Positions 37,906-45,200 of a stretch of DNA of 64,000 nucleotides are shown here, in pieces. A program made the position numbers and the translations under genes. The notes beneath the pieces are model-generated. The model was not told where the DNA came from, ran no database searches, and was given only the letters and a program-made list of their open reading frames with translations. Each line of letters starts with the position of its first letter. The first letter of the stretch is position 1. This DNA comes from Botryllus schlosseri (taxonomy: Eukaryota): NCBI GenBank assembly GCA_051294905.1, contig CM119374.1, forward strand, positions 19,592,001-19,656,000. The letters run 5' to 3'.

Positions 37906-38692
37906 CATTATGTGATTGTCGTTAAAATATGATCTGCTATTATGAGCTCACGGCGGTCCGCAGCCCTATCCAGTGGATACATGTGTGATGTGTTGTGACT
38001 TGCGAGTGTTCGAAACAGACTATTCGACAGAACTGCTCAATTGATAATCGCTACTGGAGGACGTTGGAGCATGTGGACGATATTTAAGAATGAATAACCT
38101 GCGAGGCCATAAAATGTTTTCGCATGTGAATTGGTACGTGACTTCGATGGTTTAGGCTGGACTATGTTGTATGAATGTTGTACTTTTTCTACCGGGAACG
38201 GGAACTACAATACCTACCCAATCGTAGGCCCCGACTGCACCGTGCACACAGCATACAGTACAGTGCACGGGGTAGGATATAGGGGCTGTATATGGGTCTG
38301 GTGTGGCGTGACTGTGAATTTCGACACCGGGGCTCACGTTAGGGTTTGGAGTAGGCCTATGTGTCGCGCAATCTGCATGGAAGGTTGGCAGGGCAGTATA
38401 CGCTCGAGGGTCAATTGTGTGTTGATGACATAGTTCGTGTTTGCATGTGTGGACATGGGTGGGTTCGTTGTGGTCCACGTTGGTCACAGTGCACTTACGA
38501 TCGTACTCCTAAACACAGCGGGAAAAGTAACTATTCAGGGCGCAACATATATTGTTGGACTCAGTGGGGCGTTGATAAACTCGATATACGTCGAGATACG
38601 GTGTTATCAAATATTCAAGATTTGCTGCCATTTTGATATAGCCGATATGCCGATTTTACTACGAATGGACAATGGACATGACATCTGGAACT

Positions 38693-38858
38693 TTAGGACT
38701 TCCGGTCATTGTCAGAAGGGTGATTAGCTGACGCCGTCTGTGGTGGATCACTTCTGCATTTGACTTTGACTCGTATTGACTGCATTTGAAGGATGGTTCG
38801 TCGTAGCTCATCACAAGTCTTGGCTAGAATGGTTGATTGCTTCAATTTTTCTGCTTCC
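38693..38858 (-). CDS. Candidate terminal exon of the long isoform of the secreted precursor
   Basis: Acceptor atatttatgttacag| at 38859. Phase-2 entry gives (R)EAEKLKQSTILAKTCDELRRTILQMQSIRVKVKCRSDPPQTASANHPSDNDRKS*; the other two frames close early. Confidence 0.5.
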
Positions 38859-38967
38859 CTGTAACATAAATATGTTTCAATTCTTATCTGAACCTACTTC
38901 ATGAAATTGCGACATCAAATGTCGTCAAATTTGGCTGTGTGCCTTTTACATATAGGCCTATCTAGAA

Positions 38968-39178
38968 CAATGGTTACCAACGTGGGCGAAATCGTCCCCC
39001 GGTGGGCGATTTCGAGAAACAACGGTTCAAAATACCGAAGGGGCGCGACATGGGGGGCGAAAATATTAGAATGTCCAGTGAGATGGATTTAATTACAACA
39101 CGCAAAAATGCAGGTGAAGACGGCTTATTTTCGAGCTTGATAAGGAGGCGATACGTCGACAAAGGTTGAGAACCACTG
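38968..39178. mobile_element. Short Charlie-type hAT MITE related to 37519-37905
   Basis: Ends caatggttaccaac / gttgagaaccactg; perfect TSD ATCTAGAA (38960-38967, 39179-39186). Confidence 0.88.
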
Positions 39179-39434
39179 ATCTAGAAGAATGTATCAGCCA
39201 ACTGGACACTTGAAAGTCGCAATTGCTTAGTAGTTTAGCAATCGTAATATGGTTATCTGCAATTATATAGCTATTTCGACTAGCTATTTGCCTGGAATTT
39301 TCGCTCTGGCATGCGCTGCAATCCAATTAAATGTAGCAGTCTGAAAATCAACCGATAGTCGATATGGATTCGGACACTTGTGTACCCAGCCCTGTAGTTC
39401 ACCGTATCTGGGAATAACAGGATAGGCATGTAAG

Positions 39435-39713
39435 TGTTGTTGTTGTTGTTGTTGCTCGTGGTATTTATGGTGTTTGTCGACTACTATGGTCATTTAAACC
39501 AGGCCAATTGTGATCATTTTTATTCCGTAGAAGCCTAATTCTAGCACGGCCCGCTTCTAGGCTTTTATAAGACACCGCTTACGCGGTTGTGCTGGCGAGG
39601 AGAAGCCTAGATAAACCTCCAACACTAAAGTGGGAACTCGGGAGTCAACCTCATTCGGACGCGAACCCTCAATGGTGTTGCAGCTGTGGATTATACCACT
39701 ACGCTATCTCGCC
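39435..39713 (-). mobile_element. Full-length tRNA-derived SINE (family 2)
   Basis: On the - strand: head GGCGAGATAGCGTAGTGG (A box), GGTTCGCGTCC (B box), (CAA)n tail; homologous pieces at 14841-14948 and 60439-60541. Confidence 0.82.
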
Positions 39714-39784
39714 ACGCCTTGTACGTGTGTAGCTGACAAGCCGGTCAGCGGTACAAACTAATATGTTTGTCTGCATCCATTCAC

Positions 39785-39933
39785 CTGGCGAGGTGTTGAA
39801 GTCTGGTGCGGTCAGGTTCATGCGGCGCCACGCGAACGCGAATATTGCCTCTTGCGTTGTGATCATTAATGCGTGACAACAGATCGAGTGCGATGTCTCT
39901 TCGGCTTGGAATGTCTTCGGGCGAAGGGTAAAT
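39785..39933 (-). CDS. Candidate internal exon of the long isoform of the secreted precursor
   Basis: Branch-like CTAAT and acceptor ctccccttgcag| at 39934; donor CCAG|gtgaat at 39785/39784. Phase 0 to phase 2, encoding IYPSPEDIPSRRDIALDLLSRINDHNARGNIRVRVAPHEPDRTRLQHLA(R). Confidence 0.5.
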
Positions 39934-41667
39934 CTGCAAGGGGAGTATTTAACCCATTAGCTTGATTAAGATTTTGATGTATCTCTAAAATGAAGTCGCG
40001 CCGCATCCGCTTCGTGTTGTCGCGTAAGAATACAATGTCGATCTCGCTCCGCGAGTCACTACTGATTGTCGAGCGCGAGATCCTTCTCGCAAACAAGCCA
40101 CAGTTGAGCGCGCGATCACCTTATCGACGGTCAGGTTCCTAAGTTTTGATTGGATAATTTATCACCATATGGACACAATTTTGATTCGTGTCTCTTTAAA
40201 GCTGCGTTGATAGAGTTGATATAACCCTTCCTTCTGTAACTTATATCACAAGCCTGTACCTCACGTAGTAGGAGGAAAATTATTTCAGCATTTTATAGTT
40301 GCAATGTTGCCCTTTGCGGACTACTACAATGGACGAACTTTGGAAATCAGTATGTAAGTTACTGAGATAATATGGGATCCTAGTTGCATCTTCACTATCC
40401 AACTGACCGCGAAGTTATTGAGCCGAGTGGAAGCCAACGCCACCCTACCTTATACTTTCAACCATTTGACGAATTCCGTGTTATATATGCATGCTATGTT
40501 CATTGCTCATTGTTAAACATAACGGGGCAGGCCGTGTGCGAAATCTAAAGTCGATGTAGAAGAACACTTGTGTGATCAACTTTGATATTCGATTAGGCAT
40601 CACTAAACGGGGGCAAGTTTTATGACTAACTATATCAAGTCAGTGTATGGTGGATATTGCTTAATCTCTGAATAAGAGAGATGCCGCTTCTCTTGTCTCG
40701 AGATTTTTCCGCCGCCTTACATCATGCCTCAAAATACCGCTATATTTCAACGAGCTATTCGGTACGTCGACGTAATTACTCTCTGTTTGCAAACAGAAGA
40801 GATCAGTCGCCTCACAACTACTGCATGTTTCCTTTTGTTTTAAAATAGCTATCTTATTCGCCGGCTATTTTGACGGCTCGTAACGCGCGTCTCCTGTGCA
40901 CAACGGAATTCACGACGTATCGCCAAGACAAGATTTTGCGTGTAATAAAATATTATATTGAAAAGGAATAAATATGTAGAAACAAGAAAAATAAATAGTA
41001 AAATGGCGTAATTGCATATAGAAATTTGATGAATCACAGTGGCATGGCTCATATCACGAAAGCAAAAACGTTCATTCAGAGACTGTAAATCCAATGCCAC
41101 TTTACGGAGCCCGTTATTCGCAGAGGCTGAAGCCCGCAGTTTCAAATTCCTCGACAAAGGTACTTTGAATCGATTGACATTATATTTCAGCCCTCACACG
41201 TTACTGATTTCTTCAGATTTTATCAATAACTCTCCTTGCCTGCGTCACAGTGTTGTAACAGGCTTCCGCTAAGGGGCAAGTGGATAGGTAGCGTTCACAG
41301 TCACAGAAGCACGAGTCGCAATTCTGGTTTGACGCTCGAAGTCCCCAAATATTTGAGCGGTTGAAGTCGATTTTCGAGTGAAGCACAGGTCATAGCATTA
41401 CACTGCACACGTTGATAACGCTTGTCACGGCGTTTTTATGTGTAGAAACGGATATCCGATTGTAGATGTTCAGGCAAACATATATATATCCACTGAACTA
41501 TGCAGTTCATGAGCTTTTGTAGTCCTTGGAGCATGGTGATCGCTTGGGATGAAAACTAATCCTTTGCGTAGCATTTGTGCTCCGAGCCTTTCTCTCTCTT
41601 CCTCCCTATAACCTCACAACTCATGTCCATGCCCTTGTTCGGCTATGTCCGCGGCAGAATGTTTGCT

Positions 41668-41718
41668 TCAACCGATGCGAGTCTTCAGCTTGAAGAGTCT
41701 GATAATTTTCCGCAAATC
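41668..41718 (-). CDS. Exon 3a (terminal, short isoform) of the secreted peptide precursor
   Basis: Acceptor ctgacctaatttcgcgcag| at 41719, phase 0; DLRKIIRLFKLKTRIG-TGA. Confidence 0.6.
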   Translation of the reverse strand, partial: DLRKIIRLFKLKTRIG

Positions 41719-41849
41719 CTGCGCGAAATTAGGTCAGTTATATAGGGCACAAATTTTCGATTTTCCGTACTCTATCGTGTTGCTGAACTCCGACTGTGGC
41801 ATACGGGCTATTGGTGTATGTAATGCGCATAAATATCACAAATATTCAC

Positions 41850-41973
41850 CTTCATTGATATGCTGCGGCTGCCGCTGGTTCTGGCGAGGAGGGTCTGGAG
41901 CAATCTGTATCTATGCGTTTCTCTGATGCCGCTCGACAATCTTGCATTCATGATGATATCCACATTTCGTCTG
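41850..41973 (-). CDS. Exon 2 of the secreted peptide precursor (PTH-family-like mature peptide)
   Basis: Acceptor atctctctttacag| after a 65-nt intron; (S)RRNVDIIMNARLSSGIRETHRYRLLQTLLARTSGSRSISMK; donor AAG|gtgaat. Confidence 0.8.
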
Positions 41974-42038
41974 CTGTAAAGAGAGATTTATAGTTTTAGT
42001 CTATATTCCGCATTCAACTCAAGTTACGCTTGTCTTAC

Positions 42039-42142
42039 CTGTGGTGCTTGGTGACTTTTCGAGTTAGGCTGTCTCTGACCGGCACAGCAAGTGTGCAAAT
42101 CGCCAATGCGATGATTGTGAAAAGAGTGATGTAAAGCTTCAT
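42039..42142 (-). CDS. Exon 1 of the secreted peptide precursor (signal peptide and propeptide)
   Basis: aaacgaaaATG context; MKLYITLFTIIALAICTLA-VPVRDSLTRKVTKHH; strong phase-2 donor CAG|gtaaga at 42039/42038. Confidence 0.85.
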
Positions 42143-42219
42143 TTTCGTTTTATATTCAGTTCGTCGACGTAACAAGGTCCTTCGCAGTCGTATTATCGAT
42201 CTCTGCTGTTGCTTGTCTT

Positions 42220-42255
42220 ATTTGACGGGAGGTGACCACGGCAGGTGTTTATATA
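42220..42255 (-). promoter_or_regulatory. Core promoter: TATA box and initiator-like site
   Basis: TATATAAA at 42255-42248 on the - strand; GTCA(+1)AAT with A at 42223, 32 nt after the first T of the TATA box and 81 nt before the ATG. Confidence 0.6.
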
Positions 42256-45200
42256 CCCGATTTTACCGGGATTTTTTCTCTCGGTGCCGCTTATTTCAAA
42301 AGATTACGTCTGGTAGAGAAGCGATGGAAACGTTTATGCGAAAAAAGAGAGACGCGAGACATCACAAGCTGATGCTTGTTGACGCTGATGCGCCTTACGG
42401 TATATTGTTATGACCGAAAGATACTAGTTTTTACACTACTCTTGGATGTAACAAACCATGCTAAATAATAATATTTGAAAAAAGAATTCTCGGCAATCCG
42501 ACGAACTGCCAAGATGGATAGAGCAGCTCACAATTTATACATAAAATACACTGTCGAAACATTTGCTTCCTACACATTCAACAGATTTGATGGACTGCAT
42601 CGTGGTAAATTGCAATACCGAGCCTGGACGGAACGCATCGCAAAATATTGAGATATCACGAGCTGACGTTTCGTGCCGTAACACGGAGGCACGGATATAA
42701 CGTACGCCGAGTACGATGCTATCTTGTGCCGGCGTGTGTACCGCAAGAGTGCCGGCGTGTAATCTTGGACCGTGTGAAAGTAAGCAATGTCGAGAGTGTA
42801 TAGCTTTCGGCCTCGCTTTGCCATTATCAGTCACATTCTACATGGCAAACTGATTGTACTCACGGTATATTGTCAACATACTCTTACTGCTCATAGACTA
42901 GATACCTCCTTCGTCAAATATTGAATGTTTTGTGGACTTTTAATTCCAGATCAGAAGTATCCAAATTGAATTTTACGATGGCCGGGTCCCTCGCGGAGCT
43001 ATTTACGATGATGTTTAAAAAGGATTAGACATAATAATATACACAGCAGCGCTTAAAGATGTAGCATTAAATCAAAGTAAGTAGCATAGACCTGTAAATT
43101 ACAATAACAATTAGACACATAGTTAAGTAGCGTAGTAATATCAATTGATGTAATATCATCAACTTGAAACAGGGAACTATAAGCCACAACCTATTGTTGT
43201 AATCAGCATGGTATCCGTCAAGTAACTTTAACAGAAACAAGACTTTACTCGTGAACACTGGAAAAAATTCATCTATTCACGCTGTCCAGCTGAAGACCAA
43301 GTATAGCGTGTGATGGCAGAGCTTCCCAGCCAGTGGGTCACTGGTAGGGGGCGAAGGTATTTCAGTTGGGTCACAAAGCATTTCTAAATGTTACAGTTTT
43401 CTATTCGATATGTCATTGAGTTTGTCACCAAATTTCTCCCATTCTCTCACCACTACGAGACCGGCTTCTAAACTGTAGCTGTAACTAAATCCAAAGCTCG
43501 GAACAATATGAAAACGGTTACTCCTAATGCTCCGTTGCGTGTGATATTGTCAATAAGCCTTAAACTTGATATAATAATGTCTAATATGCAAGCTCAACTT
43601 TCATGTTTATACAATTCTTTTCTCATTAATTTGTTTTTCTTTGGTTTGGTTATAAAACTTGCATTAAAATAGGGTAGCGAACCGAAAAAGATTGGGAATT
43701 TTGGCGTATTAGATATTTTCTGTAATTTGACAGAACGAAGTTTCCTTGGTTCACTTGGGATCCATTCGCATATTACTGTATACTGCAACGGGGCCTACAA
43801 CCCCGACCCGACATTAACTAAATGCTAAGGTAAATTGGAGACGCCCATGATCAACTTGTGATCAATAGCTATTATTCGACTGGTCTAATCATACCTGGCG
43901 GGGTGCATTTTATATCCATTATATTACGCAATTTTATGATCCAGTCGGGTATGTAGAACTAGAAACCTGCAGTGGGATAACATTTAAAAAGGTGTTATAC
44001 TCGGAACATCGTAGTATGGTCTTGTGCGTTCCGAATTAGACCTGCAAGCGTTACTATACGGTTTACAGCTCACGTACAATATGCAGAGTGTCGAAACAAG
44101 GACTGACATGATATGTAGTCATTCAAAATAATCCAAGCTAACCCTAACACAAGCTAAGATGACCCCTAACTTCAACCAAAGCTAACCCAGACCTTACTTC
44201 GCTCGTTTGAATAACTCGATATTATGTCACTTGCTATTTTTGGTACCCCCGCCATTATGACAGTCGTTGTTTTGTCGGGATGCCACGGCTTACATAGGTT
44301 CATAATAAGGACTGGGAAATGGGCACAATATGTATTCTGGTATTAATAATCGAACTTTAGAATTCTTCCGAGTACTGCAATTTATTTCATCATCATCGAT
44401 ACTTATCGTACAGGAGATGGTGAAGAACTTAATCACTGTGTGAGACTACTCGCCGACGAAATCTTTCACTCAGTCGGTGCCTGGCTCGCAACTCGATCAA
44501 TGTACAGTACATGTACAAATTTAGTATGGATGAGTCGCCCTAGAGGCTTATTTTCCTTCATGGACAAGTCGAAAGACTCGGCTGTAAGGGTTTTCATATG
44601 CCTGATGTCATCAATGGGTATTACTCGAATAGCAGACGTGAATCGAATGCTCTCGGCTCGACTTAGTTGGAGGGACTACAATTTCATCACCCCCGTCTGT
44701 CATGACATTAGTCCATGCTACTACTAGGCAGATTTAGGAACTTTCGAAAATTTGTTTCATTGCAAATTATTATTTATTACTTAACTTTTGTTTTCATATT
44801 TAGAGAAAGTCGAGCAATATGGTATTAGAGCACTCCGATTCGACTAGCCAAATATGCTATCAGTGTATCAGAATATGCTATATTCTATCAGTGTCATGCT
44901 GTGCTGAGAAAGTTGTCCGACCTGTTGTTGCGTGACTTATTCTGTGCACTGAGCCTTTCCGATTACCGGCGTGGTTGCGTTGCTTTTTTCGGCGTTTTCG
45001 CCGTTACGCTGTGACACCCACTAACTTTCTTCGCTGGACGTTCTCAACACGTCATGATACAAATACCCGCATGCATTGTCTGGCTATTTCCTCTCCAGTA
45101 ATCGGAGCTGACTACAGGACGTCGTACTCGGATCCTGCTGCGGATATAACTGCAGTAATTCCAACAATGATTTCACTTCCACCTACTTTACCCTCTGTTT

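What the first reader, a model, noticed from the sequence alone, without database searches (positions are those of the whole stretch)
41668..42255. Spliced secreted-peptide gene missed by the ORF track, with PTH-family-like architecture
Seen in sequence: TATA and Inr at canonical spacing, three exons with GT-AG introns of 65 and 131 nt, and a 92-aa product MKLYITLFTIIALAICTLA-VPVRDSLTRKVTKHHS-RR-NVDIIMNARLSSGIRETHRYRLLQTLLARTSGSRSISMKDLRKIIRLFKLKTRIG. It has a clear signal peptide, a dibasic RR site and a C-terminal Gly (a possible amide donor). Established, from memory: vertebrate PTH and PTHLH have a phase-2 intron in the codon just before the KR cleavage site, and an R-x-x-hydrophobic-L-x-x-x-L helix near residues 20-28. 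Both appear here (AG|C AGA CGA; R-Y-R-L-L-Q-T-L-L, R at mature position 19). Human SCYL2 and PTHLH are both on chromosome 12, which is only weak macrosyntenic support. Inference: an invertebrate PTH/PTHrP/TIP39-like or other class-B GPCR ligand. A cationic helical antimicrobial peptide is the alternative.
Basis: partly seen in the sequence, partly recalled or inferred. Interest (0 to 1): 0.82.

Follow-up and report, generated by a model that had tools for sequence, protein, structure and literature searches.

The report
Orphan secreted helical-peptide gene, sea squirt
A colonial sea squirt really does transcribe and splice this small gene for a secreted, strongly basic, helical peptide (in two splice forms), but nothing measurable ties it to parathyroid hormone, so it remains an orphan candidate hormone or defence peptide.

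Summary
RNA-seq junction reads confirm both GT-AG introns (65 and 131 nt). Template-switch reads put the start site at 42223, 32 nt after the TATA box, and a poly(A) end lies near 40936. The mRNA encodes the 92-aa pre-pro-peptide. The gene is larger than reported: a second splice form joins exon 2 to exons at 39933-39785 and 38858 downward, giving a 180-aa precursor with a second S-RR site.

The parathyroid hormone (PTH) reading is not supported by sequence:
- Pfam PF01279 gives no match.
- Alignments to verified PTH and PTHrP(1-34) are at chance (p 0.78 and 0.38).
- No homologue turned up among 1.84 billion proteins, and there is no paralogue in the genome.

What remains is generic: an intron just before the dibasic site, one 30-residue helix, and a loose R-x-x-hydrophobic-L-x-x-x-L motif.

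An alignment anchored at the cleavage site resembles GHRH and secretin (p 0.0005 and 0.002, post hoc). A family profile does not confirm it (p 0.14).

The genome carries PTH-receptor-like and secretin-receptor-like genes but no ligand gene that Pfam can detect, so a class-B ligand role stays open, at roughly one in four. A cationic defence peptide is about equally likely.

The scan noted this same stretch once before, and not on other DNA.

The parts
42248..42255 (-). TATA box (TATATAAA), first T at -32 from the mapped start site
   Evidence: Sequence; spacing checked against the cap site mapped
42039..42223 (-). Exon 1: 5' UTR 42223-42143, then ATG at 42142. It encodes the 19-aa signal peptide, the 16-aa basic pro-piece and the first two bases of Ser35.
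   Evidence: 26 X24 reads end at 42223 with a template-switch-oligo tail; translation; hydrophobicity
41974..42038 (-). Intron 1, 65 nt, GT..AG, phase 2
   Evidence: 45 junction reads in X24 plus contigs in X1 and X2
41850..41973 (-). Exon 2, common to both isoforms: last base of Ser35, RR (41972-41967), then 39 residues of the mature peptide. Residues 1-30 (41966-41877) are predicted to form one continuous helix.
   Evidence: AlphaFold2 single-sequence model, helix over residues 2-32 of the exon peptide, pLDDT 85-89
41719..41849 (-). Intron 2 of isoform A, 131 nt, GT..AG, phase 0
   Evidence: 41 junction reads in X24 plus contigs in X1 and X2
40936..41718 (-). Exon 3a (isoform A): 16 codons for a cationic amphipathic tail ending in Gly, stop at 41670-41668, then a 732-nt 3' UTR to the poly(A) site
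   Evidence: X1 contig of 1064 nt ends at 40936; poly-T loose end at 40934 in X24; hydrophobic moment 0.96 over 11 residues; AATATA-type signal about 20 nt upstream
39785..39933 (-). Alternative exon 3b (isoform B): continues the frame from exon 2 and contains a second S-RR site
   Evidence: An X2 contig joins 41850 to 39933 (skips 1916 nt, GT..AG) and 39785 to 38858; translation; the one SNP seen here is synonymous
38450..38858 (-). Alternative exon 4 (isoform B): 55 codons with two Cys, stop at 38695-38693, then 3' UTR. The 3' end was not mapped and may reach about 38021.
   Evidence: X2 contig record 8; translation; RNA-like assemblies of three studies hold a quarter or more of this exon's words; both coding SNPs are synonymous

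Best explanation
This is a single-copy gene of a colonial ascidian for a small secreted pro-peptide of the prohormone type.

Shown:
- A TATA promoter, with the cap site at 42223.
- Two mRNA forms that share exons 1 and 2. One ends in exon 3a (92 aa). The other ends in exons 3b and 4 (180 aa).

Read from the sequence:
- A 19-aa signal peptide and a 16-aa basic pro-piece.
- An S-RR convertase site placed exactly at the start of exon 2.
- A mature peptide whose first 30 residues are predicted to be one alpha-helix, followed by a flexible Ser/Gly-rich linker.
- An isoform-specific C-terminal part. In isoform A it is a 16-residue, very amphipathic cationic tail ending in Gly, a possible amide donor. 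In isoform B it is a second S-RR site followed by a 92-residue piece with two Cys.

Inferred, and my preferred mechanism: the products act outside the cell as signalling peptides. The free N-terminus set by RR and the long helix would suit a class-B1 (secretin-type) receptor, and the genome has at least seven such genes with no ligand gene that Pfam can detect. Alternative 3' exons would change which C-terminal peptide is co-released.

It cannot be filed in the PTH family. If anything, the peptide looks more like GHRH or secretin than PTH, and that resemblance is weak too.
For: Gene and transcript:
- Junction reads, cap-site reads and the poly(A) end are; the translations are.
- The isoform B joints have GT..AG ends.
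- RNA-like assemblies of three studies hold a quarter or more of isoform B's last exon.

Coding constraint: the three SNPs seen in the isoform-B-specific coding exons are all synonymous. With about 24% synonymous sites that has p of about 0.013, on small numbers.

Helix: AlphaFold2 gives one helix over residues 2-32 with pLDDT 85-89.

Register:
- An ungapped alignment anchored at the RR-defined N-terminus scores 20 against GHRH(1-29) (p 0.0005) and 17 against secretin (8 of 27 identical, p 0.0024).
- The family-wise p over the five hormones tested is 0.0023.
- When these hormones are slid along the whole precursor, residue 38, the first after RR, is the best register for secretin, GHRH and PHM.
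- The GHRH, secretin, PTH and PTHrP reference sequences were verified in the PDB.

Receptors in the same genome:
- Three tandem PTH-receptor-like genes on C3. For the copy tested, the best PDB hits are PTH2R at 3e-20 and PTH1R at 5e-18.
- Three secretin/VPAC/PTH1R-like genes on C6.
- One CRF/calcitonin-receptor-like gene on C15.
- Genome-wide scans with PF01279 and PF00123 find no credible ligand gene.
Against: - No homologue at all was found. The word-indexed search found none, phmmer against 1.84 billion representatives found none, the protein atlas gave no usable hit, and the genome has no paralogue. There is therefore no conservation evidence for exon 2.
- A 10-peptide secretin-superfamily HMM scores the peptide no better than 14% of its own shuffles. 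Pfam gives nothing. The hallmark His/Tyr1, Phe6 and Thr7 are absent.
- I noticed the GHRH/secretin resemblance before testing it, so the p values are optimistic.
- Exon 2 carries two amino-acid polymorphisms inside the helix (Y57I, T62N) and no synonymous change. Run X24 also shows a strongly divergent second allele or copy (table 7).
- Fast change, net charge +10, a tail with hydrophobic moment 0.96 and fairly high expression suit a defence peptide as well. Expression was about 1,100 of 12.9 million sampled reads, roughly 80 RPKM.
Confidence: 0.4

Rival explanations
1. Host-defence peptide. The precursor releases a cationic amphipathic helical peptide, possibly C-terminally amidated, that acts on microbial membranes, like other sea-squirt antimicrobial peptides.
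For: - The mature isoform A peptide has net charge +10. Its tail has a hydrophobic moment of 0.96 over 11 residues and 0.62 over 18.
- It ends in Gly, and from general knowledge clavanin-type ascidian peptides are amidated.
- It was assembled in at least 14 RNA-like runs of four studies and reached about 80 RPKM in X24.
- It is an orphan with no homologues.
- It carries non-synonymous polymorphisms and a divergent second allele.
- The same species makes a styelin-like peptide, botryllin, in morula cells (PMC9966394, abstract seen).
Against: - The pro-piece is basic (+3), not the acidic, charge-neutralising piece usual in such precursors, and isoform A has no acidic extension.
- The first 30-residue helix is only moderately amphipathic: no 18-residue window within it reached the moment of 0.49 or more seen for windows reaching into the tail.
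- From general knowledge, sample-specific alternative 3' exons and a repeated S-RR site are typical of neuroendocrine genes, not of antimicrobial peptide genes.
- The isoform B exons look constrained.
Confidence: 0.3
2. True PTH-family gene. On this reading it is the urochordate co-orthologue of vertebrate PTH/PTHrP/PTH-L/TIP39 and the natural ligand of the three PTH-receptor-like genes on C3.
For: - The intron lies directly before the dibasic site, and the motif here is S-RR. A review reports the first intron before KR in shark pth2 and before an SRR motif in teleost pth-l (PMC4354418).
- Alternative 3' exons change the C-terminal domain, as reported for PTHrP and PTH-L (PMC3009671).
- R-Y-R-L-L-Q-T-L-L lies at mature positions 19-27. 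Shuffles place such a motif at positions 18-21 in 0.2-0.5% of cases.
- Val2 is present.
- PTH-receptor-like genes exist, and PF01279 finds no ligand gene in the genome.
- Sequence tests have little power in this family: phmmer with PTH(1-34) does not recover natural PTHrP at E<=0.01.
Against: - No PF01279 match.
- Anchored alignment p 0.78 (PTH) and 0.38 (PTHrP). Local alignment p 0.74, 0.16 and 0.35 for PTH, PTHrP and TIP39.
- The S/A-V-S-E-x-Q-x-M/L-H activation motif is absent.
- The motif is one residue out of register and was picked after the fact.
- From general knowledge, a C-terminal Gly is not a PTH-family feature.
- An intron before the cleavage site is not specific to the family.
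- Reviews say PTH-like peptides were already predicted in tunicates by Mirabeau and Joly 2013. I could not obtain those sequences to compare.
Confidence: 0.1
3. A young, fast-evolving, lineage-restricted secreted peptide with some other extracellular role (for example tunic, adhesion, or self/non-self or gamete interaction), or with no settled function. On this reading the hormone-like features are coincidental.
For: No homologue anywhere. Single copy. High allelic divergence at the locus. Similarity between the two S-RR peptides is not significant (p 0.13-0.19). Exon 3b has only a chance-level resemblance to an AAA-ATPase segment (E 0.17).
Against: Clean promoter, efficient splicing and solid expression in several studies. 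Synonymous-only variation in the isoform B exons. A well-formed signal peptide, convertase sites and a confident 30-residue helix.
Confidence: 0.2

Closest known systems
Vertebrate PTH / PTHrP / PTH-L / TIP39 family (Pfam PF01279)
   Same: - The layout: signal peptide, short pro-piece, dibasic site, then a helical peptide of 30 or more residues.
- An intron placed just before the dibasic (S-RR) codons.
- Alternative 3' exons that change the C-terminal part, as in PTHrP and PTH-L.
- A loose Arg / hydrophobic / Leu pattern around residues 19-27.
   Different: No profile or pairwise similarity. No S/A-V-S-E N-terminus. The motif is out of register by one. The peptide ends in Gly. No orthology or synteny evidence.
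Secretin / GHRH / PACAP / glucagon superfamily (Pfam PF00123)
   Same: - The peptide sits on its own exon directly after a dibasic site.
- Asp3, Leu10, Ser11 and R-L-L-Q-x-L at positions 21-26 match secretin in the register fixed by the cleavage site. Against GHRH the matches are Asp3, Ile5, L-L-Q at 22-24 and Arg29.
- Pairwise p is 0.0005-0.002, and residue 38 is the best register on the precursor.
- A possible C-terminal amide.
   Different: His/Tyr1, Gly/Ala4, Phe6 and Thr7 are missing. The family HMM is not significant (p 0.14). No Pfam match. The mature isoform A peptide is about 54 residues rather than 27-44.
Protostome iPTH / PXXXamide / QSGamide, the ligand of invertebrate PTH receptors (PMC7224569)
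   Same: Signal peptide, dibasic site, a single mid-sized peptide and a Gly amide donor. That family also has no sequence similarity to vertebrate PTH, which shows that PTH-receptor ligands can be unrecognisable by sequence.
   Different: The features described for that family are an N-terminal Ser-Asp, a Pro at -4 from the amide, and Gly followed by two basic residues. None is present here.
Ascidian cationic alpha-helical antimicrobial peptides (styelins, clavanins, botryllin)
   Same: A short secreted precursor, a strongly cationic amphipathic helix, a possible C-terminal amide, lineage restriction, fast evolution and good expression.
   Different: A basic rather than acidic pro-piece, and no acidic extension. 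An N-terminal dibasic processing site that is repeated in a second isoform. Alternative splicing. No sequence similarity was detected in database searches.

Membership tests
PTH / PTHrP / PTH-L / TIP39 (PF01279) | Significant match to the family profile | tested here: not met
   hmmscan of the exon 2 peptide and the other exon peptides against Pfam at E<=10 gave no PF01279 hit. A genome-wide PF01279 scan does not pick up this locus. Its only hit is a repeat artefact on C16.
PTH / PTHrP / PTH-L / TIP39 (PF01279) | Conserved N-terminal activation sequence (S/A-V-S-E-x-Q-x-M/L-H) at mature residues 1-9 | tested here: not met
   The mature N-terminus is N-V-D-I-I-M-N-A-R, and only Val2 agrees. N-anchored BLOSUM62 scores are -35 (PTH, p 0.78) and -23 (PTHrP, p 0.38). 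The reference peptides were verified.
PTH / PTHrP / PTH-L / TIP39 (PF01279) | Receptor-ectodomain binding pattern Arg20, Trp/Phe23, Leu24, Leu28 (from general knowledge of the solved PTH1R ectodomain complexes) | tested here: inconclusive
   R19-x-x-L22-L23-x-x-x-L27 is present, one residue out of register. The pattern arises in 2-5% of shuffles at any position and in 0.2-0.5% at positions 18-21. It was chosen after the fact.
PTH / PTHrP / PTH-L / TIP39 (PF01279) | Intron immediately before the dibasic processing site | tested here: met
   A phase-2 intron splits the Ser codon just before RR. The literature reports an intron before KR or SRR in PTH-family genes (PMC4354418). This is not specific to the family, and the phase in vertebrate genes could not be checked.
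PTH / PTHrP / PTH-L / TIP39 (PF01279) | Activates a PTH receptor | not testable with these tools
   Candidate receptors exist as three tandem genes on C3. Their ectodomains are split over several exons, so a complex prediction from unaltered references was not feasible.
PTH / PTHrP / PTH-L / TIP39 (PF01279) | Orthologues or conserved synteny linking it to vertebrate PTH loci | not tested
   No tool here reaches other tunicate genomes. No neighbouring gene was identified: none of the ten ORFs of at least 110 aa that were scanned has a Pfam domain.
Secretin / glucagon superfamily (PF00123) | Significant match to the family profile, with the His/Tyr1, Asp/Glu/Gln3, Phe6, Thr7 N-terminus | tested here: not met
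   No Pfam hit. My own 10-peptide HMM gave 0.8 bits, and 14% of shuffles did as well. Only Asp3 of the hallmark N-terminal residues is present.
Secretin / glucagon superfamily (PF00123) | Pairwise similarity in the register set by the cleavage site | tested here: inconclusive
   GHRH p 0.0005, secretin p 0.0024, PACAP p 0.017. The best register is residue 38 for secretin, GHRH and PHM. The test is post hoc and the signal comes mainly from the R/K-L-L-Q stretch.
Protostome iPTH / PXXXamide | N-terminal Ser-Asp, Pro at -4 from the amide, and Gly followed by basic residues | tested here: not met
   Compared with the description in PMC7224569: there is no Ser-Asp near the N-terminus, Lys stands at -4, and Gly is followed by the stop codon.
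Ascidian cationic helical antimicrobial peptides | Cationic amphipathic helix released from a short secreted precursor | tested here: met
   Charge +10, hydrophobic moment up to 0.96, predicted helix.
Ascidian cationic helical antimicrobial peptides | Acidic pro-piece or C-terminal extension that balances the charge; haemocyte expression; antimicrobial activity | tested here: inconclusive
   The pro-piece is +3 and isoform A has no acidic extension, so the charge-balancing feature is not met. Cell type and activity cannot be tested here.

The most novel reading that the evidence does not exclude
The peptide is an endogenous ligand of one of the sea squirt's class-B1 receptors: either the PTH-receptor-like trio on C3 or the secretin/VPAC-like trio on C6. 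That would make it a highly diverged urochordate member of the PTH or secretin/GHRH ligand lineage. Alternative 3' exons would yield different co-released peptides, in the way PTHrP or calcitonin/CGRP genes do.
Probability: 0.22. Interest if true: 0.75.

Novelty: new member of a known kind. Interest (0 to 1): 0.42.

Why it matters
Tunicates are the closest living relatives of vertebrates. This genome keeps PTH-receptor-like and secretin-receptor-like genes, yet profile searches find no ligand gene for them. Reviews cite only computational predictions of tunicate PTH-like peptides. They also report that genome and transcriptome searches find no PACAP-type gene in tunicates, although partial PACAP-like cDNAs have been described.

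A well-expressed, correctly processed helical peptide gene with two splice forms is therefore a concrete candidate to test against those receptors. If it activates one, it would show how far class-B ligands can drift and would help date the PTH and secretin ligand families in chordates. If it turns out to be a defence peptide, it adds one more lineage-specific ascidian effector, which is of modest interest.

Tried and rejected
1. Word-indexed homologue search with the 59-aa open frame around exon 2, region 5-46, so that 32-103-aa proteins were eligible: nothing.
2. phmmer of the 41-aa exon 2 peptide against 1.84 billion representatives: nothing at E<=0.001.
3. Protein atlas by features: no usable hit.
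4. Own-genome searches with exons 1, 2, 3b and 4 and with the 1.4-kb mRNA region: self only, so no paralogue.
5. Pfam on all exon peptides: nothing beyond a chance 9-residue AF4 motif at E 0.18.
6. phmmer of exon 2 against all PDB chains, which include the peptide hormones: nothing at E<=10.
7. Exon 3b gave E 0.17 to a segment of proteasome ATPase Rpt1. I rejected this as chance: Pfam finds no AAA domain and the own-genome search finds no AAA gene.
9. The genome-wide PF01279 hit on C16 is a T-E-N-G repeat containing stop codons, not a gene. The PF00123 hits are at chance level, E 7-9.
10. Full-text search for fragments of the peptide in papers: none.
11. Neighbouring genes and synteny: none of the ten ORFs of at least 110 aa that were scanned has a Pfam domain. 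SCYL2 was not located, and the synteny argument was left untested.
12. tRNA and Rfam scans of 38000-42800: nothing.
13. Full-length spliced proteins (92 and 180 aa) were not submitted to database or structure tools, because they have no reference and would have had to be typed. Complex prediction with a receptor ectodomain was not attempted, because the ectodomains are split over several exons.
14. Mirabeau and Joly 2013 and On et al. 2015 are not held in the library, so the predicted tunicate and amphioxus PTH-like peptides could not be compared.
Full report
**What is there**

- ATG at 42142; exon 1 ends at 42039.
- A 65-nt GT..AG intron.
- Exon 2 at 41973-41850.
- A 131-nt GT..AG intron.
- Exon 3 from 41718, with the stop codon ending at 41668.
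- A 279-nt spliced CDS for a 92-aa product.

Intron 1 is phase 2 (AG|C), so the two Arg codons are the first whole codons of exon 2.

Earlier notes of this scan identify the genome as a colonial sea squirt. Its size (495.5 Mb in 219 contigs) is in line with a chromosome-level assembly such as the Botryllus schlosseri one cited. I did not verify the species.

**Transcription**

I laid four runs on 38000-42800.
- Raw RNA-seq run X24 has 45 reads (31 distinct starts) across the first junction and 41 reads (27 starts) across the second.
- Assembled contigs of two other studies (X1, X2) carry the same joints.
- 26 X24 reads end at 42223 and continue with a template-switch-oligo sequence. That marks the capped 5' end, 32 nt downstream of the first T of TATATAAA (42255-42248).
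- A poly-T loose end at 40934 and the end of a 1064-nt X1 contig at 40936 give the poly(A) site, about 20 nt after an AATATA-type signal.

The isoform A mRNA is therefore 42223 to about 40936, roughly 1.09 kb after splicing.

About 1,100 of the 12.9 million sampled X24 reads fall on the gene, roughly 80 RPKM. At least 14 RNA-like assemblies from four studies hold the spliced part. Run X21 (organism B) gave no reads, which is no test.

**A second isoform**

An X2 contig joins the end of exon 2 (41850) to 39933, and then 39785 to 38858. Both skipped stretches have GT..AG ends.

The 180-aa product keeps the signal peptide, the pro-piece, RR and the 39 residues encoded by exon 2. It then runs through a second S-RR site into a 92-residue piece with two Cys.

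X1 and X24 show only isoform A. In X2 the two junctions have similar depth (15 against 21). RNA-like assemblies of three studies hold a quarter or more of the last exon of isoform B.

The three SNPs seen in the isoform-B-specific coding sequence are all synonymous. That is about p 0.013 under neutrality, on small numbers. Its 3' UTR is roughly three times more variable.

The two S-RR peptides are not significantly similar to each other (p 0.13-0.19).

**The product**

- Residues 1-19 form a typical signal peptide (mean hydrophobicity 2.3, T-L-A|V). The 16-residue pro-piece is basic.
- AlphaFold2 without an alignment predicts the exon 2 peptide as one helix over its residues 2-32 with pLDDT 85-89, followed by a disordered Ser/Gly-rich stretch.
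- The mature isoform A peptide has net charge +10. Its exon 3a tail has a hydrophobic moment of 0.96 over 11 residues and ends in Gly.

**Is it PTH-like?**

Every sequence test says no, or says nothing.
- Pfam gives no PF01279 hit at E<=10.
- phmmer against all PDB chains, which include PTH, PTHrP and other peptide hormones of 20 residues or more, gives nothing at E<=10.
- Ungapped alignment from the RR-defined N-terminus scores -35 against PTH(1-34) (p 0.78) and -23 against PTHrP(1-34) (p 0.38).
- Local alignments give p 0.74, 0.16 and 0.35 for PTH, PTHrP and TIP39.
- The PTH and PTHrP reference peptides were checked against PDB chains.

The R-x-x-hydrophobic-L-x-x-x-L motif is present at mature positions 19-27, one residue off the PTH register. 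It arises in 2-5% of shuffles at any position and in 0.2-0.5% at positions 18-21, and it was selected after the fact.

Two architectural points do match what reviews report. The first intron lies before KR in shark pth2 and before an SRR motif in teleost pth-l. Alternative 3' exons alter the C-terminal domain in PTHrP and PTH-L. Neither is specific to the family.

Sequence tests also have little power here. PTH(1-34) itself does not retrieve natural PTHrP at E<=0.01, and the insect ligand of PTH-type receptors has no similarity to PTH.

**An unexpected, weak lead**

In the same N-anchored test the peptide resembles GHRH(1-29) (score 20, p 0.0005) and secretin (8 of 27 identical, p 0.0024). The family-wise p over the five hormones tested is 0.0023.

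When these hormones are slid along the whole precursor, the first residue after RR is the best register for secretin, GHRH and PHM. The GHRH and secretin sequences were verified.

The hallmark His/Tyr1, Phe6 and Thr7 are absent, and I noticed the resemblance before testing it. I treat it as a lead only.

**Receptors and missing ligands**

The genome has class-B1 receptor genes:
- Three in tandem on C3 (9.56-9.72 Mb). The transmembrane exon of the one copy tested is closest to PTH2R (3e-20) and PTH1R (5e-18).
- Three on C6 (5.33-5.66 Mb); the one tested is closest to the secretin, VPAC1, PTH1 and PAC1 receptors.
- One on C15, closest to the CRF and calcitonin receptors.

Genome-wide scans with the PTH and glucagon/secretin profiles find no credible ligand gene. 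So ligands that escape profile detection must exist, which keeps this gene in play as a candidate.

**No relatives, and fast change**

No homologue was found by the word-indexed search, by phmmer over 1.84 billion representatives or in the protein atlas. The gene is single-copy in this assembly.

Exon 2 carries two amino-acid polymorphisms in the helix (Y57I and T62N) and no synonymous change. Some X24 reads join exon 2 to an exon-1-like sequence that differs at many positions, which points to a divergent allele or an unassembled copy (table 7).

**Verdict**

The gene and its processing signals are real. Its family is unassigned. My estimates:
- 0.40: a signalling pro-peptide. This includes the class-B1 ligand reading at about 0.22, of which PTH-receptor ligand is about 0.10.
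- 0.30: a cationic defence peptide.
- 0.20: another or unsettled extracellular role.

The deciding experiments are cell-type localisation, orthologue recovery in other ascidians, peptidomics and receptor assays.

Noticed in passing
window 41973-42045 (reads of run X24): 12 reads join exon 2 to an exon-1-like sequence that differs from the window at many positions (sense G-F-T-R-E-L-I-K-H-H-S against D-S-L-T-R-K-V-T-K-H-H-S). 10 reads leave exon 1 into a sequence that shares only the first 14 nt of exon 2. The assembly has one copy, so this is a very divergent allele or an unassembled paralogue.
   Followed up: partly
window 39449-39770: A dispersed repeat inside the isoform B intron has very high depth in RNA-like assemblies (about 4050 in X1, 119 in X2), with many different flanks. 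It is not a tRNA gene and matches no Rfam family.
   Followed up: partly
window 39805-39888 (exon 3b): The peptide A-L-D-L-L-S-R-I-N-D-H-N-A-R-G-N-I-R-V-R-V-A-P-H-E-P-D-R aligns with a conserved segment of proteasome ATPase Rpt1 (10 of 28 identical, E 0.17 in the PDB search). Pfam and the own-genome search do not back it, so it is probably chance.
   Followed up: yes
G000:C3:9562000-9716300 (loci L003, L006, L012, L016, L020): Three tandem class-B1 receptor genes. For the one copy tested, the transmembrane exon is closest to human PTH2R and PTH1R. These are candidate orphan PTH-type receptors of this sea squirt.
   Followed up: partly
G000:C6:5330000-5662100 (loci L004, L007, L009, L013-L015): Three further class-B1 receptor genes; the one copy tested is closest to the secretin, VPAC1, PTH1 and PAC1 receptors. 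A single CRF/calcitonin-receptor-like gene lies at C15:11622500-11628500.
   Followed up: partly
window 42250-42774 and 38021-38198: Run X2 has low-depth contigs (about 7 and 20) upstream of the mapped start site and downstream of the mapped part of exon 4. It also has an unspliced contig across intron 2. These could be pre-mRNA, DNA carry-over or further transcripts.
   Followed up: no
G000:C16:15921701-15921931 (L023): The only genome-wide PF01279 hit (20.5 bits) is a tandem T-E-N-G-type repeat containing stop codons. It is a profile artefact, not a PTH gene.
   Followed up: yes
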